In this document: positions 6,870 through 48,500 of the stretch, piece after piece
How the letters are laid out: every line of letters begins with the position of its first letter
Numbering within the stretch: position 1 is the first letter of the stretch
DNA from: Octopus bimaculoides
Lineage: Eukaryota
Length of the DNA: 64,000 nucleotides
Assembly: GCF_001194135.2 (NCBI RefSeq)
Contig: NC_068985.1
Coordinates: 21,591,537 to 21,655,536 of the forward strand
Reading direction: 5' to 3'
Program-made: the position numbers and the translations under genes
Notes under the pieces: model-generated
What the model was told of the DNA's origin: nothing
What the model saw: only the letters and a program-made list of their open reading frames with translations
Databases searched by the model: none

Positions 6870-7780
6870 GGTTCTTTTAAGGTTCATTTTATGACAACCT
6901 GATGCTGTGCCCTTCGCATAGTCCAGACATAGGTTCTTCAAATGTTGTTGATACTCCTTTGTGACACGTTTCACTCGGTTTCTTGGAGGTTCGCAACGAG
7001 AATCTTTAATCAGTGTTTCTGATACAAGAGCATCTTTTCGAATGCCTTCAAAGGCCTTCCAGATGGTTGGGTGGGCATACCCCACAAGTTCATGGAAATT
7101 AAAATTCCAGCTCTCGCATAAGTGTTGGTGCGACCATCATTATAAACAGTTGCCAGGTGGACATTCCATAACTGCGGTGGAAACAAGGGAGGAACCTTTC
7201 TCATGCGTACCGGAGAAATTATTCCATCAAGAAGAGCTATTGCCTAGATGAGATGTTAAGTGCCGAATACATGTACTACTGAAATAGTCTACAAGATCTT
7301 TCAGTCCTTCAACATCAGGTGCATTATCCATTAGATAACCCATACCACTGGCCACTGTCTACAGATGGAAAAGCCAGTCCATCCAACATTCTACAAAAAT
7401 GTTTCCCCCGGTCATCATTCCTGTACACAGTGGTCAGTCCCAAACTTTGTACCTTTCTCCATGTACTTTGGGTCAGATGGTAGAAAACAGCCACGAGATG
7501 ATACGTGTGGTCCCAGAATTGTTGAAATAGCACTGGATTGAATCCCAGATGATTGCATTTATCCAAGGAGTTCTTCATATGTGGATTGCGACTTTCCCGA
7601 CAGAAAGGCATGTTACGGCAGATAAACTAAAAGGAACACGAATGATGAATACTTGTTGGAAAATTTTGGGAGCTATTGCAAAAATTCCATCCATAAACCA
7701 TGTTAAACTGCGGGCTAAATGCTGGTTGGTTGCAAATATTATTCTCTCTGTCGATTCAGGCCAGTTTTAAAAAGTAGTTG
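6870..7780 (-). pseudogene. Decayed MULE (Mutator-like) transposase
   Basis: Minus-strand frames give WFMDGIFAIAPKIFQQVFII (DGTF-type catalytic motif), FYHLTQSTWRKVQSLGLTTVY...RMLDGLAF, WNVHLATVYNDGRTN and GYAHPTIWKAFEGIR, in the expected order but with stops and frameshifts. Confidence 0.8.
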
Positions 7781-7953
7781 GAATATTCGTATTTTAGATA
7801 TAAAACAATAGGATAATCCATTGTTTTATTTCTGTCGTAATATAATGAATTAACTCATAGCAAAATATCAATTAAAAACTTTATTACGTGATAGATGTAT
7901 TTATTCATTGGATCCGAAACTTCGTAGGAAAGTGGGAGGGGGGGATATTCCCA

Positions 7954-7990
7954 TATAAATAAAGCTGCACACGCCATTTCTGTCCTTTAC
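7954..7990 (+). promoter_or_regulatory. Putative core promoter of nucleolin copy A
   Basis: TATAAATA at 7954-7961 followed by pyrimidine tract CCATTTCTGTCCTTTAC at 7974-7990, 66 nt before the ATG. Confidence 0.5.
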
Positions 7991-8055
7991 GCAGAAGTTA
8001 CATACTCATTCACTTCGTTCAACTCACTCGAAGTTAATATTCAGAAGAAAGTGAA

Positions 8056-11000
8056 ATGGCTGGTAAAAAGAATAAGGAAAAGGTATGTTATTTTATTAGT
8101 TTTCTATTTTATTCAAGGATAATATCTTTTGAATATTTAATAAGCTGGTTAAAATTGAAATATACAACTTGAAAGTTAGCCAACTGGAGAGTCCACGTGT
8201 TCAAGCACATGTAATAAGGAACGAGACTGTTTCCAAATCTTTCGCCAACAGCAAATTAATAATTTCAAATTAAAAAAAGATCTCACTATAATATCAAGTA
8301 AATTGTCTTACGACATGAATTTTGCAGTTTTAGCCGTAAAATTATTTGATCAGCTGTGGAAGTTAAAAGATATTAAAACCTATTCCACGTGGTTAGTGAC
8401 CTTATCAAAAAACGAGAAGTGATTATTTAATCAAGTGCTGTTTATTTAATTTATTGAATTCTGTCTCCACTTTTGGGCTGAGCTTCGGAATAATTACCGC
8501 CTCACTCAAAAAGCTTATTTTTTCATAGAATCGTAATCTATTTAAACATCCAGAAAGTATTTTCGGAAGTAGTCAAAAAAAAAAAAAGCTACTTATGTAT
8601 TCCAAAATGGAGAAAGAAGCGAAGTTAATTTTTGCAGAATCGAAATGCCCCATATTTAAATTTTTAGAAATTAAATTAAAAGGTAACTGCCTGTTGTAAA
8701 TCTTAAAAGAGAAATATCGATATCTCCGTATTTATAGCCTATTTGAATTTATTAAAAATCTAAAAGTGACTTGAAAAATATTTTGTATAATCTAGACATT
8801 GGTGAAAGTGTGATGATATGGGACAAAAGTGGCGCAATTAAAATTGGTTATTGGTAATAAGGGAATGTGAAAAAAATAAATTTGGCATTTCTCAAAATCA
8901 GTAAATTCTTCATTACTTGGATTTTTAGAAATATATTTTTGTTGAAAAGGCGCCGCTGCCATAGCTGTTTTACGATTCTAATTTGTGTCATGGCTGGGGC
9001 GTCCACGTGTGTGAACTACGCAGAGTTGAATGGTGCGCTTGTGTTAGGGAGAGCCGCCTGCTTGACTGATTTCACATTAAACATTGCGGCGGTTATCGAT
9101 AAAATTGCGATTCAGACAAAAATATTGTTTCTGTGTTGTAGTGAATTAAGAATACATCACACTTTTTCTCATCGATTATTACAATATGTGTGAAATCGAC
9201 AATAGTAATTTTTTACTCGTAGACGTCAAGCTATGAAACGGATAACTGTTGAAACGAAGATCCCTAGTAGTTTCGAGTTCGGTTCCACTACTCACTAATA
9301 TGGGCAAGGGCAATTGTCCGTTTATAGTCTCTGGTCAACCGTTGTCATGTGAGCGAATTTGGTACGCAAAAGATCGACCTACATATATGTTTGTGCAGTT
9401 TCTATCGACTAAAGAGTAATTTGTTTGAAAAACCACTGCATCATAGCAAGGACGATCTCCATTAAATTGAAATTTTGTAACAACCAGGCGATCGGGAAAA
9501 TTTTCAGATTAACACTCGAACGATTTTCACTAGGGTTTTAGGGCCAGGGTTAGGGAATACCGTCCAAAACACCCTAGTGAAAATCGTGCGGGTGTTAATC
9601 TGAAAATTTATCGACGTTTGTTTCCGTATTGTAAGAGTAGATTGCATCGCATCTAATATGGTGCAATAGTGGGTTTACCTTAATGAAATTCCAGTTCACC
9701 ACGAGGTGGGCTTGTGAGAATTGAATTGGCTGCGGAGAAATTTATGTATTACAAAGAAAAAAATTCAGATGACACTTTAAGACTTGTGCTACAACATAAA
9801 GGTCTAATTACACGGATGCTCCAATAATTTAGTCTTTTCATTGAAGTTGATAATGGTGGAGCGAAAACAACTGCATTTATTCCAAAATCTGAGAAGTGCT
9901 TCAAAAGTTGTTTTTTTTATATTGATATAGTAGGGGAAAAAATTAATTCGTAATATGTATTTTTGTTTGGGCTATATTTGTTCAGTGCCCTACATAAGAC
10001 GCTAAAGATGTGTGGTTTGAGCAATCATTTTTAGGATGTTGATTGATCATATCAACGTTTTTCTCCCAAGTGTCATCTTGCTGGTTATTTTATTGTCCTG
10101 CATGCTTTCACGCATGCGCAACTAAAACGTTTCAAAACTTCCAGATGTCGGTGTGGGCATTCCGAAAGACAGGAATGACTTGGGAAATTGTTTTCAGAAT
10201 CGTGTAGTCTTGTCAAAAGAGTTACTTAGCTGGCGATTTTTGTTTCATTAGTTTTTAAGAAGCCAAATAAGATTTTTATATTTCCACTACTGTTGTTTCT
10301 AATTTTTAGTTGCACCACTTTTCTCTCATGTCACCGATATTTCTCAATGTCGCTGTTTTGGGGCTTTAGTTATTTCTGCTATGAACCAAGTTGATGGGAG
10401 ATTAGTAACTAAGTCAGTATCCACATTGACCAACCTTTGTCCGACCCATGATAGAAGTAGGAAAGTGGACGTGAAAGTAACGCTTTGATTCCCCTAAACA
10501 CTTCATTTTCTGTATTACATTCTGGCAAGCTAGAGTTCATCTTTGCTTTTCGTCCTTCCAGGATCAATTAGATTGGTGATCTTTCACTTGAAGATCATAA
10601 AGTGGAAGTGATGCAAATAGGCATTTAAACATTGATGCAATTAAAGTGAATGTTACTTGATATCGGTATTATAAACTCGAAAAGGTCCAAACATTCGTAC
10701 ATGACTGACAGTGAAAATTGAAAAGTCATCAAAAACATGGCTAAATATGAAATGGCCAAAGGAATTGTTATGATTCGTAACATTTTTTAAAATGGGTCCA
10801 AATAAGAATATGTAAACGGATACCTCCCTCACCTAAAATTTTTTTTTTTTTTTTTACGACATCCCACTTTTTAGGCGATGGAGATTGCTATTCTGAATTT
10901 TTTTTTCAAAAATGGCCAATTTCGATTAATCTCTTCATTTTTCCAGAATTTTTTTTTTTTTTGCGAGGCACGTATAAAAACTACGGAGATTATGATTCTG

Positions 11001-13393
11001 AAAAAAAAAAACATTTTAAAATTTCAATTCCCCCCTCCATCCTCAAGCAAGCTATTTACATGCTAGAGATAACAGCCGAAAAGGGTTTTGTTGAGAAGTG
11101 TGTTCGGAGATANNNNNNNNNNNNNNNNNNNNNNNNNNNNNNNNNNNNNNNNNNNNNNNNNNNNNNNNNNNNNNNNNNNNNNNNNNNNNNNNNNNNNNNN
11201 NNNNNNNNNNNNNNNNNNNNNNNNNNNNNNNNNNNNNNNNNNNNNNNNNNNNNNNNNNNNNNNNNNNNNNNNNNNNNNNNNNNNNNNNNNNNNNNNNNNN
11301 NNNNNNNNNNNNNNNNNNNNNNNNNNNNNNNNNNNNNNNNNNNNNNNNNNNNNNNNNNNNNNNNNNNNNNNNNNNNNNNNNNNNNNNNNNNNNNNNNNNN
11401 NNNNNNNNNNNNNNNNNNNNNNNNNNNNNNNNNNNNNNNNNNNNNNNNNNNNNNNNNNNNNNNNNNNNNNNNNNNNNNNNNNNNNNNNNNNNNNNNNNNN
11501 NNNNNNNNNNNNNNNNNNNNNNNNNNNNNNNNNNNNNNNNNNNNNNNNNNNNNNNNNNNNNNNNNNNNNNNNNNNNNNNNNNNNNNNNNNNNNNNNNNNN
11601 NNNNNNNNNNNNNNNNNNNNNNNNNNNNNNNNNNNNNNNNNNNNNNNNNNNNNNTCCATTAAAGAAAAAAAAAATTTAAGGGGGGGAAAGGGTTCCGGTT
11701 ACATACCTCCATCTGGACCTTTAAATGTTTAAACGTGACTATCTTATAAATAAGTTTTGCTTTCATATTTTCGTACTAGTGATAAATTATTTCGATATTG
11801 CATTATGGAGGGGAATGATTTTTTTCATTATTAAATTGATAATTCAGTTGGACCTTTTTATAACTCATTCGGGCATAACCCTTTGTTGATTTACCTCATT
11901 GGGCATTCTGCCATTTTAGATTGATAGATACAATTTGAGGGAGGTTTTTGGCTGCTACTTTTATAAAGTAGAGTGACTGTGCAGTGATTCCATTGGGCTC
12001 GATTTCGTTGCGGTGTTGCTTAATACGTGCCTAATTCATCCTTGTGATGAATTTGGCTGTCGTGGTTCCTTGCGTGTCGGTCCGTAATGCCATTGGCTCG
12101 AGGGGTATCGGAAATAAGCCTTTGGCTGCGATATCAGTTCGGTTTGGCCGTGTTTCGATAAAGGGTTACCGTGCAAACAAGTGGTTATCGAGTATTGCAT
12201 ATTCTGGATGCTGCAATGGAATTTCCTGTTTTGTGTGCAAGCTGGTGTCAACCTGGTCTTACAACAACACCCACTAACCAGTATTGTGAGTCTACGGTGA
12301 ATGCTAAGCTGCGCCATGAAAAGGGGTATGAGGTAATCATTATGTACTTTTCAAGTTAATAACTGTTTGTCATTGCACATTGCTCTGTTGTTTTATATTG
12401 AGTGGACATGCCATTTTAACCTTCTTGTACTTTAGCTGTTATGTAAATATCACACAAAAATATACCAAATTTTAAAGCGTTTCAGGATGTATCACAACCA
12501 GCAACTGTTCACAGAGTAATTGATTTTCAGATCATGGCCATATATTGTCTACAGTGGAAATTCCTCTAGTCCATGGGGTCACCAAACTACAGGCCACATG
12601 CCAGATCCAGCCTTCTGCCACTCTGTACCTATTGTGTAAGTGCTTGCAAAGAGAGTTCATTTGCCTCTGGTATGGCATCAGTGTTTGGAACAACTTCTGT
12701 CTAAGCAAACATTTTGAAAAGTAAAGTATGTGAAGTCAGCACATTGAACGAGGTTGACTGACAAGCATTTCCCTTGGTTGGATGCAGCAACTCCAAAGCA
12801 AATATTGATATTCTAGAAGCTAACCATGGGTTTCACAAATCTCACTAAGCTATTTTGCTGTTTAGTTTGTGAGATTCAGATATGTGTGTACTGGGTGTGA
12901 TATAGCTATCTTATTGCTATTATCGCCTTCTTCGATAACTTTTTGAGAAATAAATATTTTGGTTGTCTTTTTTTCTGTGTATTAATTGTGTTGAGCAAAA
13001 TAGTTACATGGCCCATGCTTGTTATTCCCTCTTATCTGGCCCCCTGTGTAAAAAGTTTGGTGATCCCTGCTCTAGTCAAGTGAAAATGTTAAACATTGCC
13101 TAATTTATATTATGATGGAAATACATTCTCTTGTCTTGAAACAAGATTTGAAGTATTTCTTGTGATAAAAAAACTGATTGCAATCCTGTGTAAATAAAAA
13201 AAAAAATTCTGCAGTTGCCAAAGGTACAAGCTAAAGTTTGAGAAAGTGAAATGGCTGTTGGGCTCAACAAGTTAATGCCTTCATAGATTTGATAATGAAC
13301 AGTTAAGTTGTGATTGGTTTAATGCAAGAAGCATTAAGAATTAAAAATTTTAGCACTTTGGCAAATTTAGATACAGGAAGCACTATATATATG

Positions 13394-13440
<47 letters not shown>

Positions 13441-13450
13441 NNNNNNNNNN

Positions 13451-13485
<35 letters not shown>

Positions 13486-16400
13486 TGTGTGTATGGTGAG
13501 ATTAAAGGTGACAAAATAACTTGGGTTCCTTATGCTTTATTTTAAGAAAATTTTATATATTGAATATATATTACAAAATTACTTAATGCTTCTGGTATTT
13601 TAGTCTCAACAAATGTTATGTATCTTGTAGAACCTCTTTTATGTACTATTTCAAATTGTTAATGCTTAAAATGACTTCTGTATATTTAATAAATTTTGAA
13701 TAGGACACTTATTTCTTACTCTTTTTTTCTAAAGCATGAATTTTCAAGAGCCTTAGGATGTGGCTACAAAATTTTTTGCCTTCATATTTTCGTACTAGTG
13801 ATAAATTATTTCGATATTGCATTATGGAGGGGAATGATTTTTTTCAATATTAAATTGATAAATCAGTTGGACCTTTTTATAACTCATTCGGGCATAACCC
13901 TTTGTTGATTTACCTCATTGGGCTTTCTGATACTTTTATATTTTAAATATAACTTTGACCATAGTGTCTTGATGTCTTTATAGTTGTATTGTTTCCTTGG
14001 TGTGCTAAACTAAAAGAATATTCTACATGGATTAAATTATATAAATTGCATAGCTACCTGGGCATTTAAATTTTTTTTTATGTAAAACAACAATTACAAT
14101 TTGTCAATGTGGCAGTTCATATTATGAATGCAAATACCAAGACATTTGCCTTCATTTAATTTTGAAGATAAAGAATAACTTCATTATTAAACTAATATTT
14201 GGGACATTTAACATGAAGTGGGAAGTTTGTGTCACAACTCAGGCAGGTTTGTATTAAAAGGGTTAAATTTTTAGGAAAAATAATTGTAAATAAAATTACA
14301 TTTTATAGTGTTTTTCAAATGTAAACATTGTATGTTTTCCAAGTTTTGATCCAGCAGAGTATACAATTTAATGTCTGTTGGCAGTCATTTTATCCTGAGT
14401 TCTGAAAGTTCCCAAAATTTACCCAGTTGCTGTATATGCTCTACTTCTGTGTTGGTTTCTATTTCAATTAATAATGTTTCTTTGTTTTAGGCTTCCAAAA
14501 AGACTGTTAAACCTGCCAAACCTGTAGAACCTGAAGAATCTTCAGAGGAGTCGTCTTCAGAATCAGAAATGGAAGTTGTGAGTACCTTTTTTTTTTTTTT
14601 AACACAAAACCTATCAAAGATTAGATTCGGTGTGCTTGAGTACAGATAAATCCTTGAATTAAATTTCATATTTTTATTTTAAAATAATTTCTCTCTGAAA
14701 CCTAAGAAGGTAGAATTACTTGGCAACCCAGTCCTGTCTTTTCTCCTTAAGTCATTTGCCATTTTTTAATAATAACCATAACTTATTCAATCACCTTCTG
14801 ATCAACATTGCTCCCTGTCTTTATCAACAATGTCTACTTCACTCACTTTGTCACCACTATCCACTTGCAAGAATTTGTACTTGTTCCTTCCAACTTTTTG
14901 TACATAACATAAATTGCCTCTGCATCTGTATAAACTCTGTAGATCTGTCTTGGGGTAGCTCTAAATTTAACTCACGACAGGTTGTATAGGTTGGTGGCTT
15001 GGTTGTAATTTGAGACCTGAAAAGTTTTTTTTCTTGCAGTTAGTGGATTGTTACACATGGACATGTTTACATGTGATTAAGAAGCTGGTTTCCTGACCAT
15101 GTAGCTTTTGGTTCAGTCCAACTACTTGGCACTTTTAGTACTTGTCTTCTATAGCACTGAGTTAAGTACTTTGTGAGTGGATTTGGTTGATGGAATATGG
15201 AGAAAGCTGTTCATGTATGTGAGTGCTCTTGCTTGTCATTGGTTTGAACAAGTATTGTTGGCTTTCAGTCTTTGATGTTTTGCTATGGCAAAATATTACC
15301 TTGCTTGTAATTCAATCTGATCCATGAATAAAGATGTATGCTGAAACAATTTTTTCTGATAGAAAAAATTTTTTTTTTGTTTTTAGGAAGCTCCAGTTGC
15401 TACAAAAGCTAAGAAGCAGTCAAAACAAAGCAAAGTTGCTGGTAAGATTTGATTTATATAATATTGTAATTGGTGTATAGACATGTTTTTATTGGGCTTA
15501 TGTTAGGGAATCAATTCACTCACTTCTCTGTAGTCTATCCTGGCAATGATGTTTAGGGTTTCCTGTAGGTTTTTTTTTGTTGTTTTTTTAACAAAAAAAA
15601 GCTAAATAACAGAAATATGTGAAGTGCTGTGCATTTTGTGTTTGTAATAAATGCCAGGAAGTTTGAGGTTAATCCTTTAGTGTTCAGATTACTCTGTCAA
15701 ATGTAATGCTTATTTATTCATATTGCTTTGAATTAATCTCGCATTATCCTCTGACTGAGATTTCAATGATGTGATTGCTTATTTTCATAATGACGTTGGT
15801 AAATGTGAGATACTGGATATAGTTAGTTTGAACATAGAACAAGTAGACTAATTAGGGTTGGATATGGCCAGTTTAAATGCTAAACGGTTAAATAAATGCC
15901 CATACTGGACTTGATGTACAAATTCATGAAATTTAAAAATGTTCTACCTTTAATAGCTATAATCTATTTATATCTGCTTTATTTTTGTAATAAATATTTG
16001 TTTTTGCTTTGTACAATAGCAAAGAAAAAGAAGGAAGAATCCAGTGACAGTGAAGAAGAAGAATGTAGTGAGGAAGAGGAAAGTGATAGTGAGGAGGAAG
16101 AGGAAGTAGAAGATAAGAAGAAAAAAGTAAAAAAAGAGACAGTAAAAGAGGAAAAGAAAGCAAAAAAAGAAGAAAAAGCCAAAAAGGTTGCTGAATCAGA
16201 TGATTCTGAAGAAGATTCTGATGAATCTGAAGAAGAATCAGAAGAGGATTCTAGTGAGGAAGATTCTAGTGAAGAAGGTATGCAAATCCTCAAAATATAT
16301 CTTGAATAAATTTTGTTTTGAAATGTTTTCTGATATTGACTAAAAACATCTTTTTACTTTATAGAATCAGAAGAGTCTCCTAAGCCAAAGCTCAATGGAA

Positions 16401-19400
16401 ATGCTGATGGTATTTAATTTTGGTTTTCTTTCTCAATTACCATTTTTGTACAGTTCATGTTTCCCATATGTATATAATTTAGAATTTAATATTGGTTTTA
16501 TAAACAGCTATAACCTTTTGTTGTGTTTTGGTAGTCATTACGCTAATAGTAATAACATGTACTGGTGTGTGTTATTGGCATGATAGCCGTCGCAAGGTAC
16601 AATGTGTGTATGTTATCGTTATTGGTGTAATGAGCTTCCCAAAACACGGGATTTGTTTCAAAATGTTGAGCCTCATGACAGACCTTTGGCGATATGCTGT
16701 CCTTGTGAAGACTTGTCAAGCCAAGTGAAATCATAGTCATGGCCATTGCCAGTGGTGTGTAAAAAAAAAAAAAAAACACCCATTACACTAGGAAGGGCAT
16801 CCAGGGGTAGAAGCCATGCCAAATCAGACTGGAACCTGGTAAAGCCCTCCGGTTTGCCAGCGAGGAAAGTGGCCATTAAATGATATGTGTAGTATGATTT
16901 TTTTATGGAAAACAGCTATGTACACTTTTTATTTGTGAGGTAGTTAGAAATAGAAACTTAATTACATTGTTTGTATCTGTGTAATCATTTTGTCTTCAAC
17001 AGGTTCAAAAGAAGCTAAGAAGCGTAAAACAGAGCCAGAAAATGGTAACGATGCCAAGAAAGCTAAAGTTGATGGTAAGATTTACTTTGGTTTGTGTGCA
17101 TGCTCCAAAGTTTTGTGGTTAGAAGTTCTACAGCTTCTATCAGGAAAAGCATTCTGAGACACACTTTCATATCTTAATGTAATAATGTGGCTGTTTATGA
17201 GCATACCTTGTTTCATTTATTATCCTGAACAAAAATTACTTAAGCTTGCTTCACTACTACGTGGTTCTGGGCTCAGAGCCAACCAAATCCTTGTGAGTAT
17301 TCGGTGAATGGAAGCTGAAAGCCTGTTTATATATATATATATATATGTGCGTGTGTGTATCTCCCTCCATTCCCCCCTGTTACTGCACGACAACCAGTGT
17401 TGGTGTGTTCCTGTAACTTGGCAGTTCAGCAAAAGAAACCAATAAAATAAGTACTAGCCTTTAAAGAATAAAACCTGGGGTTAGTTTATTAGACTAAAAC
17501 CCTTAAAGGTGGTGCTCCAACATGGCTGCAGTCTTATGACTGACACAAGTAAAATATTAAATTACTTAATCGGCTTTTAATGCCACATCCCAAACGAATT
17601 GATCCAGTGATCAATTATGGGATCATTTCATTCCTGCTTGGAATCACTTTGTAATTATGCTTTGAAGAATCTTGTGAATTAAAGTCTGGTATCAAACTGC
17701 ATGGTGGAGATGTATTGCTCACATTATCATCTCCAAGATCTTATCTCTTATTAAGCCCTTAGCATTCAGATGTTTGCCAAGTATGTTTATTTATTAGCAC
17801 CATTTTGAATTAATCACGTGGCTTTGAGATTTTAGGGTAGGTAGAATATTTTGGCCAGGATTTTCTAAAATAAGACTAAGCATTGCTTCTTGCTTGGAAA
17901 ATTCCTTTGTTGTCATTTCTACTTCCAAGCAAACTTCTCTTGAATTGCAGCTATGTGTGATCCAGGACAAGGTGGCAAATGTGTTTACTTGTGGTACAGG
18001 AGTTGAAATTGATAGAAATAATAAATTTGATAAATGATAAGTTACCACTGACAATATTGTTGGTTATTATGAAAGAAAGCTGATGTTGAATTTTTCAATT
18101 ATTCCTTTTCAGAGTCTGTAACAGTTATGTGCAGAAATATTCCTGAGGAAGTGACTGCTGAGGCCTTTGAGAAATTTCTTAAGAAGAAAGGAATTGAAGT
18201 CTCATCTGTTCGCAAGCGTGAGGACAGAGCGTATGTATTACAATTTCTTGTTAGCTGTTTTACATTTTATAGGCTTTTTGTTATGCATATTCACTTTGTA
18301 TTGTTTTATATTCACTCATTTATATTGCTTTCTGTTATAGATTTGCCCACATTGACTTGGCTAATCCAGATGATCTTGATAAAATTTTAGCAATGCAAAA
18401 TCTTGACTATAAAGGGTCTGCACTGACATTTGAGAAAGGTCGGCCCAAGAGACCAAAGGGAGAAAGAAACACGGGTACGTTGATTTTGTTTGTACAATAA
18501 GAACTCGAGGGAAAGAAAATCATAGATACAATGTCCTGTTGGTAGACTGAACAGTACACAACAGTTTATGCTTTTTTTCCCCAGGTGATGAATCAAACAC
18601 ACTATTTCTGAAAAATCTACCTTATGATGACTCAGAAGATAGTCTTAGAAGCAAACTGATGGAGATATTTCCTGAAGCACAAAGTGTCAGAATTCCCTAT
18701 AAAGGAGATTCACATAAGGGGTAAGATTACAATATCTTTAATTTACAGTGTGCCATTTATATAATCATTTGCTATGATTGTCTTTAGTGTTTTAAAAAAA
18801 ACAAACAAAAGTGTGCTTATTTTTTGTGCTATAGTCTGTTTTGGCCCTTTTGTTACCAAAAGCGCCAGTAGTAACCCATTCATGTTTTAATGAGAATTTC
18901 GGCATTAATCTCACTACATTCTTATGGTTTCATTTAAATACCCAACATAATGGCAGATAGTTACACTATCTGCCATTATGTTGGATATTTCAGCACTGAG
19001 TTTGAGTTCAAAGTATTTTCAAAACGAGACTGAAAATATATGGCAAAAGCCACATCTTTGGTAATGAATTGAGTATTTATATGTCCGAAAGTGAAACAAT
19101 TTGGCCAGTTCTTAGGACGGTATTAGACCTATCCAATCTAAAGAAACAAAACCATTAGAGTGTTTACTTTTTTCTTTGAATCAATTACTGCAGGAATTAT
19201 TAAACAGGGGAAAAAAAAAAAGTTGTGGCTTCCCACAATACTTAAAAGAAAGTTACATCCAAGCACTTCTAGGAGTATTGTGAATGTGTATATATAGATA
19301 TACATGCATTTGATTTATAATTGCTTTTTTTTTTTTTTTTACCTATAAGGTGCTTGACAGGGTTTGAATTGTGAATCACTATGTTTCTGTGTATAGTTTG

Positions 19401-21221
19401 TGTAGATTTATTGTTTTAAAGATGAATCTGTTTATGGTACACCTGTTTCATTGTCTTAGTGTGTTTAAAGATTAACTGTTAAATAACCCAGTAATTTGCA
19501 CAATTTGTCTTTAAACTTTTGTTGTATACTCATTGCATATTAGCTAATAACTCATTTTCTATGCTGGTGCTTAAATTTAAATAGTTTATTTTGTTAAATC
19601 AAAGTTGTTTTATTGACCCACTCTAAATTTTTCTTAGTTATTTTTGGGAAGATATTAAACTTTATTTTAAAAGTTAATTGAAACATGTAGGGTGTATTTT
19701 GGTTATCAGAAAACAGTTCTTAGTTTACTGTATTTGTTTTGGTTTCAGGTTTGCGTATGTTGAGTTTGAGAGTTCCGATAATGTAAAGGATGCACTTGAA
19801 AACAAACAGGGTGTTGAGTGCGGGGACCAACGACTGTTGTTGGATTATGCAAACAGTCCCAAGACTGATTATTCACAACAAAGAGGAAGAGGAGGCTTTA
19901 GAGATGGTAATTTTTATTTGATACTCACTTCAATTGTAATGAAATAGCATTACTTTGGTGCATTTATTAACCTTTTGTCTCTTTTTATTCAAGATGAACC
20001 AGAAGAATCCAGTGTACTTTTAGTAAGAAATCTGTCCTATGATTCAACAGAAAGCTCTTTACGGTCATATTTCAAGGATGCTACTGATATACGATTACCA
20101 TCATTTCCAGATTCTGGAAAGCCAAAAGGGTGTGTAATGACAACTTGTTCACTTTTTGCATTGTGTTGTATTGGATTTGACATTTTATTGCATATGTTCT
20201 TAGTCCATTTTTAAATATGGAACTTTCTCTTTTTTCTGTTTTAGAATTGCCTTCATTGATTTTGATTCTATTCAAAATGCAAAAAGTGCTCTGACTAAAT
20301 TTGATGGTACTAACATTGATGGCAGATCTGTACGGTGCTGTTATGCAAGAGGCAGAAATGATGGTGGTGGAGGTAGAGTAACTTTTTGTTTTGTTACTGA
20401 AGACAGGTGTGGTTGGAGTTTAAAAACTTATGCAGTAGGCATATTGGAAAGGTTTCAGAAAAGTAGATCATGGTATACTGAGTGGCAAAGTTAATTTGGG
20501 CCCAATGAAGATTTTTTTTCCCCCCTTGTATTTGCTATATTGTAGTTATTTAAATTCAGATTGTTTTTACCAAGCCACCAATGGTCTACAATTTCTTATA
20601 GTGACTTCTTACAGTTGTCACTATAACTATTTTGTTGACCATTGACCCATTAGCATTTAATGAAGCCACATTTGGCCAAAATATTATACCAGCCTCTGGT
20701 GCCTTGCCCTGTGATGTCATTATAAAACTTATCAACTACCTCAAAATATGATCTAATTAATTCAAGATAAGTGTGTATTACATTTAACAGTATGCTGAAT
20801 GCTAAAGAGTTAACGTTTGATTTTGTAAGTTCTTCGTCAGCTATTTTTCTTCACACTTAAATACAAGATGATAACACAGATTGATATGTAAATTTCTTTT
20901 CCAGGTTTTGGTGGAAGACGTGGAGGAAGTTTTGGTGGTGGACGTGGAGGAGGTTTTGGTGGTGGCCGCGGTGGCGGAGGTTTTGGTGGTAGACGTGGAG
21001 GTTTTGGTGGTGGACGTGGTGGCGGAGGTTATGGTGGTGGCCGTGGCGGTGGAGGTTATGGTGGTGGTCGAAACAGTTTTGGTGGTATGTATAACATTTT
21101 TCTATTTTGTGCTTTTAATTTACAGGTTTAAAATGGAATGTTCATTTTTCCCTTTGTCTCAACATTTTTTTTTTCTTCTCCAGGAACAGGAAGGAAAAAG
21201 ACTTTCAGTGATAGCGATTGA
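8056..21221 (+). CDS. NCL: Nucleolin-like copy A, 14 coding exons, ~523 aa
   Basis: Exons 8056-8082, 14491-14577, 15387-15441, 16020-16277, 16365-16409, 17003-17074, 18113-18230, 18341-18474, 18585-18720, 19749-19906, 19994-20129, 20245-20372, 20905-21084, 21184-21221. All GT-AG, phases consistent, 1572 nt with no internal stop. Acidic Ser/Glu tracts, bipartite NLS (KKRK...AKKAK), three RRMs (RNP1 RAFAHIDL, KGFAYVEF, KGIAFIDF), six RGG in an FGG-rich GAR domain, C-terminus GRKKTFSDSD. Confidence 0.93.
12048..12358 (+). other. Highly conserved intron-1 non-coding element, copy A
   Basis: 59/60 and 95/97 nt identity to 46420-46479 and 46607-46703; also present inverted at 42029-42339. CpG-rich against an AT-rich background. 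Confidence 0.9.
12572..13069. mobile_element. hAT (Charlie-like) MITE
   Basis: Ends CATGGGGTCACCAAACT / AGTTTGGTGATCCCTG; 8-bp TSD CTCTAGTC at 12564-12571 and 13070-13077 fits the NTCTAGAN preference. Confidence 0.85.
13389..13482. repeat. (TA)n microsatellite interrupted by a 10-N gap
   Basis: Direct reading. Other microsatellites at ~34826-34851 (CA), ~44080-44190, ~50235-50255 (GT), ~60820-60860, ~62653-62672. Confidence 0.95.
15669..15891. mobile_element. TTAA-flanked MITE (piggyBac/Kolobok-like)
   Basis: TTAA at both ends with imperfect inverted termini (TCCTTTAGTGTTCA / TAAATGCTAAACGG). Related copies near 27030-27245 and 54385-54582 (inverted). Confidence 0.5.
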
Positions 21222-27478: not shown

Positions 27479-27762
27479 NNNNNNNNNNNNNNNNNNNNNN
27501 NNNNNNNNNNNNNNNNNNNNNNNNNNNNNNNNNNNNNNNNNNNNNNNNNNNNNNNNNNNNNNNNNNNNNNNNNNNNNNNNNNNNNNNNNNNNNNNNNNNN
27601 NNNNNNNNNNNNNNNNNNNNNNNNNNNNNNNNNNNNNNNNNNNNNNNNNNNNNNNNNNNNNNNNNNNNNNNNNNNNNNNNNNNNNNNNNNNNNNNNNNNN
27701 NNNNNNNNNNNNNNNNNNNNNNNNNNNNNNNNNNNNNNNNNNNNNNNNNNNNNNNNNNNNNN
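27479..27762. other. Assembly gap (N run)
   Basis: Direct reading. Other gaps: 11113-11654, 13441-13450, 49283-49590, 50691-51247. Confidence 1.
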
Positions 27763-39700: not shown

Positions 39701-42700
39701 ATGCTTGTGTTAACATGCATGGAATCTTCACCCTCAACTGTTTACCACCATTCTCCACACATGTAATTCTTCATTGACTTTTATCAGTTTCACTCCCATC
39801 CATCTCTAATGCTGCCCTTTAGTCACTCTCTTTTACCCAGTTTTATTACTTGACACTGCTCATGCTGTTCTCTATTCAATCTCTTTATCAATAACAACAA
39901 ATAGTCATCAGTGTCTCTCTTCTATTACTCCTTCCCCAACCATTCTATTACTGTTTCACTCCATCACAATCATACTACCTCTCTCTCCTCTTTCAACCTC
40001 TTGATGAACGCATCTAATCACACTCTTGGTTATGTTTGTTATGAAAGAACAGAGACTACATAGAACTCTTTAGTTTTGCAAGGTATAAGACAACTTTTCT
40101 AATGCTGGTACTACAATAAAATACACTTTTATAAACACACTATAAAGTGATTGGATAACGAAGACAACACAGAGTAGAGAGGATTTTAGTCATACCAAGT
40201 ACATAACCTCTCTGATGCTGGTCCCATGATAAAATGCACCCAGTACACCTAAAATAGTTGGTGTTGGGTAAGGCACCCTGCCAGAGGAAGCCCCCCCCCC
40301 CCAAATGAGATGTACAAGCAAGATAATATCTAGGCATGTAGTGATTCTGAGACAATGATGATATGTCCAAACCTTGACAACATGGAAAGGGAGGCATAAA
40401 ATAAATGATGATAAGTATATTAATATTTATTAACTTTGAAATAAGAAAACAAAAATAGAATATATGAACTTACAGCATCCATTTCTTCTGGTTCTGAAAA
40501 AGACTCCTCATTAGATTCTTCAGCTTCAGCTGACTTTTTTGGATTCTAGTTCAAATTATAAAAGTCAGTAATTGAAACAAATATTCAAACTCAAGTACAT
40601 CATAGAGAAAATATAAGCAAACAAAATAAGTATATGTTAAATCTCTGAACGAGGTATTAAGTATATTTTGTATAAAATTATTGTACCCCAACTGAATGCT
40701 TCACAAAAGCCTATGATACTTCTGAACTGCAGTAGCCTTCTAAGCCTATTTCTCACCACAGCATTACTTATCCAGCGATTCTATGTTGTTTTTTTTTTAA
40801 TATATATACTAGATCTGAATTCATTACCGCCAAGAGGTTCTGGTCTCACTATTAGAGAACTCGTGTTTAAGGGACTAATTAGTATTGAATTTATTTATCA
40901 AATACTCTCTAGCGTTGGTCGATTTCCTACCACGAAAGCATTTAACACGTTCTGCTCTTGAATCTTGCTTCCACATGATTGGCAAAGAACGTCATAAAAT
41001 CGTGTTTTCCATAGCAATACTTTTTAAAACATATTTAATGAAAGTTCATCTCTTAACAGACTACGCTGGAAGCATCTCAATCTTATGTTCACCGCCCTTC
41101 CTCCACATATCTCCCCAAAATATAGAAAATGCAGAGAAATTATTTCAATAAAACATCACTAATACTACTATCTACACACTGATCAAGATCGGTTGGACCT
41201 TATGATAGTCATGAAACTCATCAGCATTAGAAAATAAAATTCACTAAAATACGAAGTGACCATAGGCAATATTAAATAAAATGAAAAAAAAAAACATGAA
41301 AAATATTTCTTTGTCGTTAAGTATGAATTATTAATGAACGAGACAAATATAATAGTTCATAAGCTGAGAATAACTGCTTAAAAATTCAGTAAGATGCCTG
41401 AATTTCGTGAACTATTTTAAGGATCAACCAAACATTTTACAATGACAAACGATATATTATTTTAACACAATGGTTAACAGATTCTTTGTGCTAGAAAGAA
41501 TATCACAGTTCGAGAAAAGGGTTTATGAAAAGAAAATATGCAACATTGATTGCTCAAAATTTTCAGTTAATTTCACGTTTTGAAAATCTTATCTTCGTTA
41601 CGTTTCTTGTTATTTTAATTGCAAATGTCATGGTTGATAAGACATCCTATTTCGATTCCTTGCTCACTTATCTGAAGTGGTTTGAGACAAGAAAACCAGA
41701 AGTAAACACAACTCATAAGCTACCCAAACAGACGTATCTTCGTATTTGGGGCCCACATTTTAATGTTACATCAAAAGTTAACAAATTGAAATAAATAAAT
41801 AAAAATTGATATATAAACAGGCTATTCTACAAGATGTATCACTCACACAATTGCGTAAACTTTTTGATACAATGGTGTGTTGTACAATAAATAGTTTGTG
41901 CTAACAGAACGAACTCTCGTGAGAATAATTCTGACCATGACAAGAAATCATTTCTCATTCATGACAAAGCAATTAAGATAACCGAGCAACGTGCAATGAC
42001 AGACAACATAGAATTTAACAGTATATAACTGAAAAAGTGCATCATGTTTACCTCATACCCCTTTTCATGGCGCAGCTTAGCCTTCACCGTAGACTCACAA
42101 TACCGGTTAGTGGGTGTTGTTGTAAGACCAGGTTGACACCAGCTTGCACACAAACCAGGAAATCCATTGCAGCATCCAGAATCATGTGATAGTCGATAAC
42201 CACTTGATGTTTGCACAGTAACCATTTATCGAAACACGGCCAAATCAAAACGATATCGCAGCCAATGGCTTATTTTCAGTAGCTCTCGAGCCAATGGCAT
42301 TACTGACCGACACACGAGGAACCACGACAGCCAAATTCACCGCATGGGTGAAAAGACGCACGTACCAAAGCGACACCATAATTGCGAAAATTTACCGAAT
42401 CGAGATCTTGTTTTGTTTAATCAGTATAATGTAATGATTAATCATTATTACAAATTAGATCCTCTAATTCTGAACAAGACCTAAATAATGATATAATAAA
42501 AGTCTTCCACTAATCGCAACGATAAAAGCTTTAAACGTTATTGTTTCTAAAGGGTAATTAGAGAAAAAAATATTAGAATTTCATAACCATATGTACTCAG
42601 GAATGCATTTTATGTAGTAATATAATAATACACAAAGAAGTCCTAACTTCTTAAATCTATCGCCGTATTACGTTCTGCTAATTTCAGTTGACCTATATTA

Positions 42701-43247
42701 GAATGTGTATGTAGTCGTCTTTGTCAGTTCAAACTCGTGGATCAAGTGCCACCGTTGAATTCTCACAGCTTCTACAAACAATGGCCTCTTTTATTTACAA
42801 ACTAAACCAAGTTGTTTAAAATTAAGGATGCATATATATATTATATATAAGAATATACATAAAATGATATAGATAAATGCATATATCTGCTTTTCCCATT
42901 TCTAGGAAATAAGCAATCAGATGAAGATGTGAGAAATTTAGGTTAAAACAAGTACTTGATATTTTTCATTTTAAGCAGAATCCGTGCATTTTGTCATAAG
43001 ATGAATATATATAAATACATATAAATATTTATATATATTTATAATTTCCTAAATAATGTAGTTATACGAGATCTTATAGTTATTTGTGATTTGTGGGAGA
43101 TTTAGAAATATTAACACTCCCATTTCCTTCAAGATTAATATTGTAAATATAACCCGTTTACAAATAAATTTTATGTATTCAAAAGATTTTAGCCTCTAAA
43201 TAAAACAGGAAACTATCGTAACATACCTTATTCTTTCTAGCAGCCAT
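27792..43247 (-). CDS. NCL: Nucleolin-like copy B, 13 visible coding exons (~527 codons); final exon presumed in gap 27479-27762
   Basis: Exons (minus strand) 43247-43227, 40545-40474, 36769-36715, 35625-35425, 35307-35263, 34922-34881, 30862-30745, 30645-30500, 29756-29624, 29402-29263, 29156-29021, 28888-28752, 28127-27792. GT-AG with the same phases as copy A and an open frame. 3'UTR homology resumes at ~27460-27300. Confidence 0.9.
31330..33863 (+). mobile_element. RTE-clade LINE, 5'-truncated and frameshifted, antisense in copy B intron 6
   Basis: Endonuclease remnant (LGDFNG), RT segments (NYRAVNFLDQVLKV, QFDFVPGRSTTGAIF, FVDIEKAFNRVP, ADDLVL), C-terminal region and (TGA)n tail. Confidence 0.9.
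35846..36191 (-). mobile_element. Full-length tRNA-derived SINE, family 2
   Basis: Minus strand begins TGGAGGCGCAATGGCCCAGTGGTTAGGG (A box) with GGTTTCGATTCCC (B box); 14-bp TSD TTCAATTAGCAGGT at 35832-35845 and 36192-36205. Confidence 0.9.
36930..39480 (+). mobile_element. Older, heavily decayed RTE LINE with a nested tail insertion
   Basis: AGDVNGYVG endonuclease remnant near 37325, RT-like fragments 38450-39450 paralleling the 31330-33863 copy, nested (-) tail copy at ~37534-37830. Confidence 0.65.
42029..42339 (-). other. Conserved intron-1 non-coding element, copy B
   Basis: Reverse complement of the copy A and C elements, in the same orientation relative to its host gene; donor-like GAG|GTAAAC with exon end at 42052. 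Confidence 0.9.
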
Positions 43248-45572: not shown

Positions 45573-48500
45573 ATGGCTGCTAAAAAAAATAAGGTATGTT
45601 ATGTTGGTTTCCTCTTTTATTTAGAGACGAGATATTTTGAATATATCAATTTATTTATAAGCAGGTTAGAATTGCAATATAAAACCTGAAATCCAAGCAA
45701 ATAGACGGAATCCACATGTTTAAGAGTATTTATAGATGGGAGTGCATCTCTCACAAAGAAATCGCAGCAAAAATAACGATCGGTAAAGCTAGTTTTGAGA
45801 AAATTCAATTTACCTAATGGCAAATACATAACTATTTGTTATAATTAAAAATATCGGTTTTTTTTTTAACCTTAATAGTTTTCACTGCTTTATCTGATTG
45901 CTGTTTCATTGAAATAGAAAAGGCATATCAATTTTAAACATGATCCAGTTGATAAATAGGCCATTGTTGAAGTAAGAAATGTATGGTGGTACTACTTGAT
46001 CCACGAGTTTGAATTGATAAAGATGACATATAAACTTGAAGATTACCACATATAAATATATATGATCAAAGGAAATTAAACATAATGCTGCAGAGATTTA
46101 AGAAGTTAAATCTACTTCTACTTCATTATGCATTAGCTCTAAAGTATAACAACTTTATTTTAAAAAATGAGATACTTTTATTGTCCATCCGTAAATATTC
46201 ATTAAAAAACAATTTTATAGACTTTTTATCGTCGCGATTAGTTGGTTGAGAGTTTTTTTTTTTACTAGATCAAGCATTTTAGACTTAGAATTTACAATAT
46301 AATTTGTAATAATGATTAATCATTACATTATACTGATTAAACAAAAACAAGATCTCGATTCGGTAAATTTTCGCAATTATGGTGTCGCTTTGGTACGTTC
46401 CTTTTTTTCACCCATGCGGTGAATTTGGCTGTCGTGGTTCCTTGCGTGTCGGTCGGTAATGCCATTGGCTCGAGGGGTACCGAAATATAAGCCATTGGCT
46501 GCGATATCGTTTTGATTTGGCCGTGTTTCGATAAATGGTTACCGTGCAAATGATTCTGAATGCTGCAATGGATTTCCTGGTTTGTGTGCAAGCTGGTGTC
46601 AACCTGCAACAACACCCACTAACCAGTATTGTGAGTCTACGGTGAAGGCTAAGCTGCGCCATGAAAAGGGGTATGAGGTAATCATTATGCACTTTTCAAG
46701 TTATATACTGTTAAATTCTATGTTGTCTGTCATTGTACGTTGTTCGGTTATCTTAATTGCTTTGTCATGAATGAGAAATGATTTATTATTATGGTCAGAT
46801 TATTCGGTCAAACTAAAGGGTTTGACCCGGTGGGAAATAAAAAATTAAAATATTCTAATAGGTGTAAAACAACTTGCTGCGAGCGAATATGAAGAAGAAA
46901 AAAGCGCGCGCTCGCGAACAGGGGTGGGGGTGGGTAGAGGCCTCGGAACATTCGCATCCTGAATGTTCCGAGACGCCTCACCGGAGCCAAGAAACAAAAG
47001 AAAGATAGTGTAATAGATGTAAAGCAACTTGCTTTGAATGAATATGAAAAAAAAAAAAAAAAAAAATGCGCTCCCGCGAAAGGCGGGGTGGGTAGAGAAC
47101 TCGGAATATTCACATCGTCACACATCACACACTCAGACACACACATACATACATATTCGTTCCCAGCAAGTTGTTTTACACCCATTAGACTATTAAAAAA
47201 AAATTTTTGTCACCGGGTCAAACACTATAATTCAGAGGCCATATCATGACGATATGTGACGATGTGAATGTTCCGAGTCCTCTCCCCACCCCGCCTTTCG
47301 CGGGAGCGCATTTTTTTTTTTTTTTCTCACATTCGTTCAGAGCAAGTCGTTTTACATCAATTACACTATTTTTCTTTTGTTTCTTGGCTCTGGTGAGGCG
47401 ACTCGGAACATTCAGGATGGGAATGTTCCGAGGCCTGGTCAAACCCTTTAGTTTGCCCGATTAGGTCTTACCCCATTTTGTTCTGTGAGCAGAAACATTG
47501 TATAGAAAGGGTAAAAAATGTATGAATGTAGACAAGATTGTATTTTGTGTATACAATGTTTATGTCAATTTAGTAATTTTTAACGTAACATTAAAATCCA
47601 GTGCTTTTTGCAAAGAAACAGATTTGTTTGCCAACTTTTGATTAGTTTCTGGAGGTATCTGTCGTGACTGAACTTAAAACTAATCGTCTTGTTTTCTATC
47701 ATCTTAGAATTGATTTATATGTGAGCAATAAAGCGAAATACGATGTCAATCGGCCATGACATTGCAATTAAAATAACAAGAAACGTAAAAGAGATTAAAA
47801 TTTCAAAATGGTCCAGATGGACTATATGTAATCTTTTTTCAGAATCGGAATCTCCATAGCCTAAAACGTGGGATTCCGTAAAAAAAAATTAATAAATAAG
47901 GGGGGGAAGGTTCAGATTACATATAGTCCGTCTCTACCCCACGTTTTGTGGTTATGGCGGATCCGATTCTGAAAAAAGAAATTTCAAAAATCGCATTTTC
48001 AAAATTTCACCCCGCCCCCAATCATTTTTCACTTGTTCCGGAAATTTTTCTTTTGCGAAATAGGTAGAAAAATACAAAGATTATGATTCTGAAAAAAATT
48101 TTTGTATCTAAAATTTCAATTTTTCAACAATAACAAAAAAAAAAGATACCTATAGATTATATCATAGGCGCAGGAGTGGCTGTGTGCACCAGGTAAGTGG
48201 AAGCTAAAAACAAGGGAAAGAAAAAGCAAGGGATCTACCCTGGTGGTCGGATGCCTATCCTTCAGGAAAGCCATTACAAATTGCATCTGTAATGAGCAAA
48301 GCTTTAATCGAACATTGTAAATATAATCAAACTATTATTGTATATTTAAAATTGTAAATATTTAATCGATACAGCTACTTCACCCCTTTTATGTTTGTCT
48401 GTCCTTGTTCGTCCCCTCTTTGTAACGCCTTGGCAAATATTATGAAATAAAGTAGCTTGCTTACCAACCACATGGTCCTGGGTTCAGTCCTACTGCGTGA

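What the first reader, a model, noticed from the sequence alone, without database searches (positions are those of the whole stretch)
12286..12358. Cluster of three 5' splice-site-like motifs at the 3' end of the conserved element
Seen: GTGAGT (12286-12291), GG|GTATGA (12326-12331) and GAG|GTAATC (GT at 12333) lie within 50 nt and are kept in copy C (46631, 46671, 46678) and copy B (GAG|GTAAAC). A-vs-C conservation stops about 25 nt after the last donor. Upstream there is a long AG-free stretch (in C, from CAAG near 46350 to CTCGAG near 46473) and no classic polypyrimidine-AG acceptor. Known: clustered U1 sites act as decoy exons promoting intron detention, or suppress premature polyadenylation. 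Inference: nucleolin output may be tuned by intron-1 detention or unproductive splicing.
Basis: partly seen in the sequence, partly recalled or inferred. Interest (0 to 1): 0.7.

Follow-up and report, generated by a model that had tools for sequence, protein, structure and literature searches.

The report
Splice-donor cluster ending a conserved intron element
Three splice-donor-like motifs close a very highly conserved, promoter-like block inside the first intron of three neighbouring nucleolin gene copies; the cluster alone is no more than chance would give, and the conserved block is the real feature, most likely an internal promoter with a short alternative first exon.

Summary
All three copies keep them; copy B has GTAAAC for the third. 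The window holds three nucleolin paralogs. I found their true first exons (A 8056-8082, B 43247-43227, C 45573-45593), so the element does lie in intron 1. No usable acceptor precedes the motifs.

The cluster itself is not unusual. Seven unrelated clusters of equal quality occur in the window, and simulations give about 3.3. The AG-free run is also ordinary, with 25 runs at least as long.

The element is what stands out. Its core, 12200-12338, is 96-98% identical between paralogs, whereas fourfold-degenerate codon sites are only 61-66% identical. Identity drops right after the third donor. Upstream lie two perfect NF-Y CCAAT boxes and a local CpG maximum. I found no RNA structure, no Rfam family, no coding-type constraint and no antisense exon.

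- **Best reading (about 0.38):** an internal promoter plus a short alternative first exon ended by these donors. Only GTGAGT keeps an ATG-started frame into exon 2.
decoy donors or intron detention stays possible (about 0.25), but the classic decoy-exon test fails because there is no acceptor.

Transcript data are needed to decide.

The parts
12035..12410 (+). Copy A of the conserved intron-1 element (5' half 12040-12175, core 12200-12338, decaying tail to about 12410)
   Evidence: Found by blastn and MAFFT against copies B and C. Identity to B/C is 87-91% in the 5' half, 96-98% in the core and 71-83% in the tail, then falls to random levels.
12286..12291 (+). Donor-like motif 1, ATT|GTGAGT
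   Evidence: Identical in all three copies. Local donor score is 2.2, in the top 3.5% of GT sites. It is the only donor in phase 0 with an upstream ATG in all three copies (sequence reading).
12326..12331 (+). Donor-like motif 2, GGG|GTATGA
   Evidence: Identical in all three copies. Local donor score is 6.1, above the median of the 36 real donors (5.6) and in the top 0.5% of GT sites. GTATG-type donors are common in these genes.
12333..12338 (+). Donor-like motif 3, GAG|GTAATC (GTAAAC in copy B); last bases of the highly conserved core
   Evidence: Score is 1.2 in A and C and 2.8 in B. Real donors ATG|GTAATT and ATG|GTAAAT end exon 9 of the same genes. Identity drops immediately after 12338.
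12316..12318 (+). Conserved ATG (GCGCCATGA) between donors 1 and 2
   Evidence: With donor 2 or donor 3 joined to exon 2 it is out of frame and reaches a stop inside exon 2 (sequence reading).
12090..12098 (-). Perfect NF-Y CCAAT box, AGCCAATGG. A second, degenerate box (AGCCAAAGG) lies at 12119-12127
   Evidence: All five AGCCAATGG matches in the window are inside the three element copies: two in B, two in C and one in A.
41970..42377 (-). Copy B of the element. Donor G positions are 42098, 42058 and 42051; NF-Y boxes are at 42260-42268 and 42289-42297
46407..46712 (+). Copy C of the element. Donors are at 46631, 46671 and 46678; NF-Y boxes are at 46462-46470 and 46492-46500. C carries a 25-nt and a 6-nt deletion relative to A and B
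8056..8082 (+). Gene A exon 1, coding part (MAGKKNKEK, donor AAG|GTATGT, phase 0). Intron 1 is 8083-14490
14491..14577 (+). Gene A exon 2 (ASKKTVKPAKPVEPEESSEE..., phase 0 at both ends)
43227..43247 (-). Gene B exon 1, coding part (MAARKNK). The element starts 849 nt downstream
45573..45593 (+). Gene C exon 1, coding part (MAAKKNK). The element starts 813 nt downstream

Best explanation
The three motifs form the 3' edge of a promoter-like, first-exon-like module inside intron 1 of each nucleolin paralog. The 5' half (12040-12175) would be a proximal promoter or enhancer, with two NF-Y CCAAT boxes, a near-DRE TTTCGATA and the local CpG maximum. The 139-nt core (12200-12338) would be a short transcribed leader, an alternative first exon '1b'. 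The donor cluster would be where that leader splices to exon 2.

Only the GTGAGT donor keeps an ATG-started reading frame into exon 2. Donors 2 and 3 leave the conserved ATG at 12316 out of frame, giving an upstream-ORF or premature-stop transcript.

**Shown:** intron-1 location, conservation profile, NF-Y boxes, absence of an acceptor, donor quality and the frame logic.

**Inferred:** that transcription starts at about 12160-12230 and that any of these donors is used.
For: 1. All five AGCCAATGG matches in the window lie in the element copies, 29-30 bp apart in B and C. About 0.25 matches are expected by chance in 128 kb (my estimate from base composition). They sit 100-240 nt upstream of the donors on the gene's strand. 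Double CCAAT arrangements are enriched in promoters (PMC4889920).
2. The element is a local CpG maximum, with 16 CpG per 200 nt and observed/expected 1.45, against 0.40 for the whole window.
3. No acceptor reaches the range of real acceptors, so the block cannot be an internal exon. Only a first exon needs no acceptor.
4. All three donor-like sites fall within the score range of the 36 real donors, and one exceeds their median. The antisense strand has one conserved weak site and no conserved acceptor.
5. The conserved core ends exactly at the last donor hexamer: about 97% identity before it and 71-83% after (Fisher p about 4e-5).
6. The element sits at very different distances from exon 1 (3952, 849 and 813 nt) and from exon 2 (about 2.1, 1.4 and 5.5 kb). 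That pattern suits an autonomous module.
7. In all three copies an ATG is in phase 0 with GTGAGT, matching the phase-0 start of exon 2, despite a 1-nt and a 6-nt indel.
Against: - There is no transcript evidence of any kind.
- The canonical exon 1 has its own plausible promoter. In A this includes a TATA-like CATATAAATAAAG about 30 nt upstream of a CCTTTAC initiator-like site.
- CpG non-depletion covers the whole 5' domain of each gene, not just the element.
- 96-98% identity is far above what 5' UTR exons or promoters usually show.
- The two substitutions in the ATG-to-GTGAGT frame are both non-synonymous, and none is synonymous. The alternative N-terminus is therefore not what is being conserved.
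- No clear initiator motif was found.
- The ATG/phase coincidence is weak evidence, because the three copies are nearly identical and so not independent.
Confidence: 0.38

Rival explanations
1. In pre-mRNA started at the canonical exon 1, the conserved intronic donors bind U1. They then compete with the exon-1 donor for the exon-2 acceptor, giving a long exon-1 extension with premature stops. Alternatively they hold intron 1 in a detained state, or suppress premature cleavage. Either way this would tune nucleolin output, possibly as autoregulation.
For: - The donors are real and of usable quality, and they lie on the sense strand only.
- The core is conserved at every position without coding-type or structural constraint. 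This resembles the ultraconserved splicing-control regions of other RNA-binding-protein genes.
- The introns are long, 2.7-6.7 kb.
- The high conservation ends at the last donor.
Against: - The cluster is not enriched over chance.
- Published decoy exons need both splice sites (PMC7373989, PMC6097662), and no acceptor exists here.
- There is no conserved poly(A) signal nearby to protect against. The first sense-strand AATAAA or ATTAAA lies about 160-610 nt downstream, differs between copies, and matches the background rate.
- This reading does not explain the NF-Y and CpG 5' half.
- The variable distance to both exons argues against a mechanism that depends on spacing.
Confidence: 0.25
2. The element is a DNA-level intronic enhancer for the upstream canonical promoter. 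It works through NF-Y and other factors, and the donor-like motifs are incidental parts of densely packed binding sites.
For: - The double NF-Y box and the near-DRE (sequence).
- The element lies inside the CpG-non-depleted 5' domain of each gene.
- There is no RNA structure, no Rfam family and no long-range complementarity.
- Donor-like clusters arise by chance at this density.
Against: - The most conserved part is not the part with recognisable factor sites. It is the 139 nt downstream of them.
- Conservation ends exactly at a donor hexamer.
- Donor-like sites show a strand asymmetry.
Confidence: 0.2
3. There is no special function at the donors. The high identity reflects gene conversion, or a recent copy-and-insert of this segment between paralogs, rather than purifying selection.
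For: - B and C are head-to-head inverted duplicates whose 5' regions align at 67-89% well beyond the element.
- In A the element has no homologous flanks. It sits between two 98%-identical 155-nt direct repeats (about 11779-11932 and 13790-13945), near two assembly gaps.
Against: - Identity within the homologous tract is strongly uneven: 66%, then 87-91%, then 97%, then 71-83% (Fisher p from 0.03 to 2e-8). A single young tract would be uniform.
- The pairwise order is B-C closest, then A-C, then A-B. A recent conversion of A by B or C would instead make A closest to its source copy.
- The coding exons nearby show no sign of conversion, with fourfold-site identity of only 61-66%.
Confidence: 0.1
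4. The element is an intron-hosted small RNA gene, such as a snoRNA or a lineage-specific microRNA. Vertebrate nucleolin introns host snoRNAs (my own recollection, not checked here).
For: The location is intronic and nucleotide-level conservation is very high.
Against: - No Rfam match at gathering thresholds. The only weak match is snoJ33 at E=4.5.
- Whole-element folding z-scores are 0.37 and -0.51. No 80-nt window over the conserved region folds like a microRNA hairpin on either strand.
- No conserved C/D or H/ACA boxes were seen; the only GTGATGA is specific to copy A.
- Only one of the 97 predicted pairs shows a compensatory change, and the covariation term does not favour the fold.
Confidence: 0.04

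Closest known systems
Alternative (internal) promoter with an alternative first exon in intron 1, of the NF-Y double-CCAAT housekeeping or proliferation type
   Same: - Two consensus CCAAT boxes about 30 bp apart.
- CpG-rich and without an acceptor.
- Donors 100-240 nt downstream on the gene's strand.
- The module sits at a variable distance from the neighbouring exons.
   Different: - No transcription start has been shown.
- The putative exon is far more conserved (96-98%) than its putative promoter and than the coding exons.
- It ends in three or four candidate donors instead of one.
Decoy exons that promote intron retention or detention (SF3B1 intron 4, OGT; PMC6097662, PMC7373989, PMC12017769)
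   Same: - A highly conserved block deep in a long intron of an RNA-processing gene.
- It contains splice-site-like motifs.
- Forced use of the motifs would give premature stops.
   Different: Published decoys are cryptic exons whose 3' and 5' splice sites are both needed. Here no acceptor reaches the range of real acceptors. Retention of intron 1 is unknown.
Ultraconserved poison-exon regions of SR-protein and hnRNP genes (established knowledge, not checked here)
   Same: An RNA-binding-protein gene family carries a non-coding block that is more conserved than its own coding sequence.
   Different: - Those are cassette exons with both splice sites.
- Their conservation is shown across species, whereas here it is shown only among three paralogs in one genome.
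Pseudo-5' splice sites that bind U1 and regulate nearby splicing or polyadenylation (P-element IVS3 F1/F2 sites, U1 telescripting; established knowledge, not checked here)
   Same: Clustered U1-complementary motifs that are not meant to be spliced.
   Different: - Those act within tens to hundreds of nucleotides of the regulated site.
- Here the distances to exon 1 and exon 2 are 0.8-5.5 kb and differ between copies.
- No conserved poly(A) signal is nearby.

Membership tests
Decoy exon (intron-retention decoy) | A cryptic exon with a functional 3' splice site (polypyrimidine tract plus AG) | tested here: not met
   The best AG in the element scores 0.4 in A and -1.6 in B and C on a matrix from 35 real acceptors of these genes, whose minimum is 2.0 and median 8.7.
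Decoy exon (intron-retention decoy) | A functional 5' splice site | tested here: met
   Three conserved sites lie within the score range of the 36 real donors, and GGG|GTATGA is above their median. This is sequence quality only; use was not tested.
Decoy exon (intron-retention decoy) | The host intron is long and is actually retained or detained | not testable with these tools
   The introns are 2.7-6.7 kb. No RNA data were available.
Poison cassette exon in an ultraconserved element | Flanked by both splice sites, and inclusion introduces an in-frame stop | tested here: not met
   The only candidate is 12242-12285 (44 nt; 38 nt in C). It would give an in-frame TAA after exon 1, but its AAG acceptor scores below every real acceptor (sequence).
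Pol II promoter plus first exon | Promoter-type factor sites upstream, on the correct side of the exon | tested here: met
   Two AGCCAATGG boxes are in B and C and one in A. They are the only five matches in the window and lie 100-240 nt upstream of the donors.
Pol II promoter plus first exon | No acceptor, with a donor a short distance downstream | tested here: met
Pol II promoter plus first exon | CpG-rich, non-depleted region | tested here: inconclusive
   The element is a local CpG maximum. However, the whole stretch from exon 1 into intron 1 has observed/expected near 1 in all three genes.
Pol II promoter plus first exon | Transcripts start there and splice to exon 2 | not testable with these tools
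   No CAGE, RNA-seq or EST data could be reached.
Intron-hosted snoRNA or microRNA | Family match, conserved boxes, or a stable hairpin with covariation | tested here: not met
Recursive splice site | A juxtaposed strong acceptor and donor (Yn-AG|GTAAGT) | tested here: not met
   The AGs directly before the GTs (GAG|GTAATC, AAG|GGGTAT) have acceptor scores of -15 and -13.
Nucleolin (identity of the host genes) | N-terminal basic and acidic stretches, several RRMs, and a C-terminal Gly/Arg-rich tail | tested here: met
   Spliced models for A (508 aa) and C (473 aa) show all three features. B has them too, but with a Gly/Tyr/Ser-rich tail running into an assembly gap. Pfam finds RRM_1 at E=6e-32. 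The best PDB match is nucleolin 9cb5 at E=4e-43. Each RRM is split over two exons. There are three RRMs, not the four of vertebrate nucleolin.

The most novel reading that the evidence does not exclude
The 139-nt core with its acceptor-less donor cluster is an RNA-level autoregulatory switch kept in all three nucleolin paralogs. It would act as a U1 trap in intron 1 that diverts pre-mRNA into detained or unproductive forms. That would be a new, 3'-splice-site-independent variant of decoy or poison-exon control in a ribosome-biogenesis factor.
Probability: 0.15. Interest if true: 0.7.

Novelty: new member of a known kind. Interest (0 to 1): 0.35.

Why it matters
Nucleolin is a central ribosome-biogenesis factor, and little is known about how its dosage is set outside vertebrates. 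A non-coding intron-1 block kept at 96-98% identity in three paralogs, whose silent coding sites are only about 63% identical, must do something.

If it is an internal promoter, the genes have a second, NF-Y-driven and probably proliferation-linked transcript class with a different 5' leader. If instead it acts on the pre-mRNA, it would extend unproductive-splicing control to nucleolin, in a form that needs no acceptor.

Either outcome can be tested directly with existing kinds of data. The donor cluster taken alone is statistically ordinary.

Tried and rejected
1. **Element as primary promoter plus exon 1.** This was my first hypothesis. I dropped it when the real exon 1 turned up upstream: MAAKKNK or MAGKKNKEK, donor AAG|GTATGT, phase 0.
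2. **ATG 12316 as the start codon.** With donors 2 or 3 it is out of frame with exon 2 and reaches a stop within about 12 codons.
3. **The core as a conserved coding exon.** A 1-nt indel shifts the frame between A and B/C. Both substitutions are non-synonymous and none is synonymous.
4. **Structured RNA, snoRNA or microRNA.** Rfam gathering and E-value searches, whole-element folds on both strands, an alignment fold and 80-nt sliding windows were all negative.
5. **Antisense exon.** There is no conserved acceptor and only one weak donor on the opposite strand.
6. **Pairing partner for an exon (editing-type duplex).** Only chance-level complementarity to the rest of each gene was found, and none is shared between copies.
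7. **Hidden ATG exon between the element and exon 2.** The B-C conserved blocks there are AT-rich and full of stops.
8. **Orthologs from elsewhere.** Exact-pattern scans of metagenome contigs (two) and of bacterial/archaeal genome contigs (one) found nothing. A protein search with RRM exons found nothing.
9. **Literature.** Searches for octopus nucleolin or for a nucleolin first-intron element gave nothing relevant.

Full report
**What is in the window**

The window is AT-rich animal DNA with assembly gaps and many SINE-like repeats. I could not identify the organism with these tools.

It carries three paralogous genes with acidic and basic N-terminal stretches, RRMs and Gly-rich tails:
- Gene A is on the plus strand, 8056-21221.
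- Gene B is on the minus strand, from 43247 down to below 27792, where it runs into a gap.
- Gene C is on the plus strand, 45573-61992.

I built spliced models by hand and checked that they translate without stops. Pfam finds RRM_1. The best match among solved structures is nucleolin, 9cb5 at E=4e-43. Each RRM is split over two exons. So 'nucleolin' is a fair name for these genes.

**Checking the observation**

The three motifs are at the stated coordinates in copy A. They are also present in copy C, and in copy B on the minus strand, where the third reads GTAAAC.

For a while I suspected the element was simply the promoter and first exon. That was wrong. An alignment of the B and C upstream regions showed a short exon...AAAGTGAAATGGCTGCTA(G/A)AAA(G/A)AATAAG|GTATGT (MAA(R/K)KNK, phase 0), about 0.8 kb upstream of the element. 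The gene A counterpart, MAGKKNKEK, is at 8056-8082. These exons join exon 2 in frame, since exon 2 starts in phase 0 and has no ATG of its own at its start.

| Gene | Distance from exon 1 | Intron 1 length |
|---|---|---|
| A | 3952 nt | 6.4 kb |
| B | 849 nt | 2.7 kb |
| C | 813 nt | 6.7 kb |

**Is the cluster more than chance?**

I built a donor matrix from the 36 real donors of the three genes. These genes use GTATG-type donors often, and also use GTAATT, GTAAAT and GTGAGT.

| Site | Score | Rank among all GT sites |
|---|---|---|
| GGG\|GTATGA (12326) | 6.1 | top 0.5%; above the real-donor median of 5.6 |
| ATT\|GTGAGT (12286) | 2.2 | top 3.5% |
| GAG\|GTAATC (12333) | 1.2 (2.8 in B) | top 5.7% |

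The weakest real donor scores 0.96. All three motifs are therefore credible donors.

Clusters of three such sites within 50 nt are common, however. There are ten in the window, seven of them unrelated to the element, and first-order Markov simulations give 3.3 +/- 1.7. The AG-free stretch is also ordinary, with 25 runs of at least 118 nt on the two strands.

The 'no acceptor' claim holds. On a matrix from 35 real acceptors (minimum 2.0, median 8.7), the best AG in the element reaches 0.4 in A and -1.6 in B and C.

**What is really unusual**

The element is the best-conserved block between the paralogs. Identity of A to B and C changes along it as follows:

| Segment | Identity of A to B/C |
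|---|---|
| 11990-12039 | 66% |
| 12040-12175 | 87-91% |
| 12200-12338 | 96-98% |
| 12339-12362 | 71-83% |
| 12363-12410 (after an indel) | 79-83% |
| beyond 12410 | 30-37% |

By contrast, fourfold-degenerate sites of the coding sequence are only 61-66% identical. The core differs from the fourfold sites at p of about 1e-13 and from its own flanks at p between 0.03 and 2e-8.

This uneven profile argues for graded selection rather than one young conversion tract. So does the pairwise order, with B-C closest, then A-C, then A-B. Conversion still cannot be excluded. The high-identity core ends exactly at the last base of the third donor hexamer. The donors are not better conserved than their surroundings, so their conservation alone carries no information.

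**Anatomy of the element**

The 5' half holds the only five matches in the window to the NF-Y consensus AGCCAATGG. Two are in B, two are in C, 29-30 bp apart, and one is in A, whose second box has decayed to CCAAA. It is the local CpG maximum, with observed/expected 1.45 against 0.40 for the window.

A wider CpG profile tempers the last point. In each gene the whole stretch from just upstream of exon 1 into intron 1 has observed/expected near 1. That covers 7500-12300 in A, 43800-40800 in B and 45000 to about 50000 in C, and the gene body beyond is depleted. The element therefore sits inside a broader 5' domain. In A that domain ends at the element's 3' end.

The core shows no sign of RNA structure or of any known RNA family:
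- Rfam gave nothing at gathering thresholds and one chance-level match otherwise.
- Folding z-scores are 0.37 on the plus strand and -0.51 on the minus strand.
- Only one of the 97 predicted pairs shows a compensatory change, and the covariation term does not favour the fold.
- No 80-nt window over the conserved region forms a hairpin of microRNA quality.
- It has no conserved complementarity to other parts of the genes.
- There are no conserved splice signals on the opposite strand.

It is not conserved as coding sequence either. A 1-nt indel shifts the frame between A and B/C. The only two substitutions in the candidate frame are non-synonymous.

**Frame logic**

- With GTGAGT as donor, each copy has an ATG in phase 0 (12208 in A; the GCAATGG ATG in B and C). 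This matches the phase-0 start of exon 2 and would replace MAAKKNK with a 21-26-residue leader, longer in B and C if the upstream in-frame ATG is used.
- With donors 2 or 3, the conserved ATG at 12316 (GCGCCATGA) is out of frame and ends in a stop inside exon 2.
- These statements follow directly from the sequence. They are weak evidence, because the copies are nearly identical and so not independent.

**Interpretation**

The layout is a double CCAAT box, then 70-130 nt, then a roughly 140-nt maximally conserved block, then donors. There is no acceptor, the donor-like sites lie on the gene's strand only, and the distance to both neighbouring exons varies. The simplest reading of this layout is an internal promoter with a short alternative first exon. 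I give it about 0.38.

It leaves one thing unexplained: why the putative leader is conserved at every nucleotide. In that reading the donors bind U1 in the canonical pre-mRNA. They then compete as distal donors or hold the intron. The classic decoy-exon definition is not met, since decoy splice sites at both ends are required (PMC7373989, PMC6097662).

A purely DNA-level enhancer gets about 0.2, conversion without function about 0.1, and a hosted small RNA about 0.04.

**Limits**

No transcript data and no orthologous sequence could be reached. All conservation evidence therefore comes from three non-independent paralogs in one draft assembly. Gene A has gaps at 11113-11654 and 13441-13450. 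A 155-nt direct repeat, 98% identical, brackets the element there.

Noticed in passing
window 8056-21221 (+), 43247-27792 (-), 45573-61992 (+): Three nucleolin paralogs lie in 55 kb. B and C are head to head as an inverted duplication centred near 44.4 kb, and their upstream and intron-1 sequences still align at 67-89%. A has no alignable introns with either. At protein level and at fourfold sites the three are almost equidistant.
   Followed up: partly
window 27792-28127 (-), gene B exon 12: Paralog B has replaced the RGG/GAR tail of A and C with a much longer Gly/Tyr/Ser-rich tail (GGYGG repeats). It has also lost most lysine-rich spacers in the N-terminal region. This looks like a functionally diverging copy. 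Its last exon falls in an assembly gap.
   Followed up: no
window 11779-11932 and 13790-13945: A 155-nt direct repeat, 98% identical, brackets a 1.9-kb segment of gene A intron 1 that contains the conserved element. It is absent from B and C. It could be a repeat family, a local duplication or an assembly artefact, and two N gaps are close by.
   Followed up: partly
window 7500-12300, 40800-43800, 45000-50000: Each gene has a multi-kb 5' domain with CpG observed/expected near 1, followed by a strongly CpG-depleted gene body. This is what one would expect if the promoter-proximal domain is unmethylated in the germline and the gene body is methylated. In gene A the switch coincides with the 3' end of the element.
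   Followed up: partly
window 19994 (A exon 10), 29156 (B exon 10), 61955 (C exon 13): Three inferred acceptors are AAG| rather than YAG| (attcaag|ATG, atttaag|ATC, tttaaag|GAA). The C version of exon 10 uses ttttag|.
   Followed up: no
window 691-739 (-): There is a short interstitial run of telomere-type repeats (TTAGGG/GGGTTA units).
   Followed up: no
window 46800-47400: A second CpG-rich stretch (14-18 CpG per 200-300 nt; contains GCGCGCGCTCGCGAAC...GGGGTGGGGGTGGG) lies just downstream of the C copy of the element. It has no counterpart in A or B.
   Followed up: no
window 26574-26873, 37534-37833, 53101-53400, 63829-64000 and others: Several families of interspersed SINE-like repeats lie in and around the genes (families D2 and D6-D13). 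There are also N gaps at 11113-11654, 13441-13450, about 27500-27780 and about 50700-51000.
   Followed up: no
window 7953-7990: The canonical promoter of gene A has a TATA-like CATATAAATAAAG about 30 nt upstream of CCTTTAC. This resembles a polypyrimidine (TCT/TOP-type) initiator, and the TTTAC part aligns with CTTTTAC in C and GTTAC in B.
   Followed up: partly
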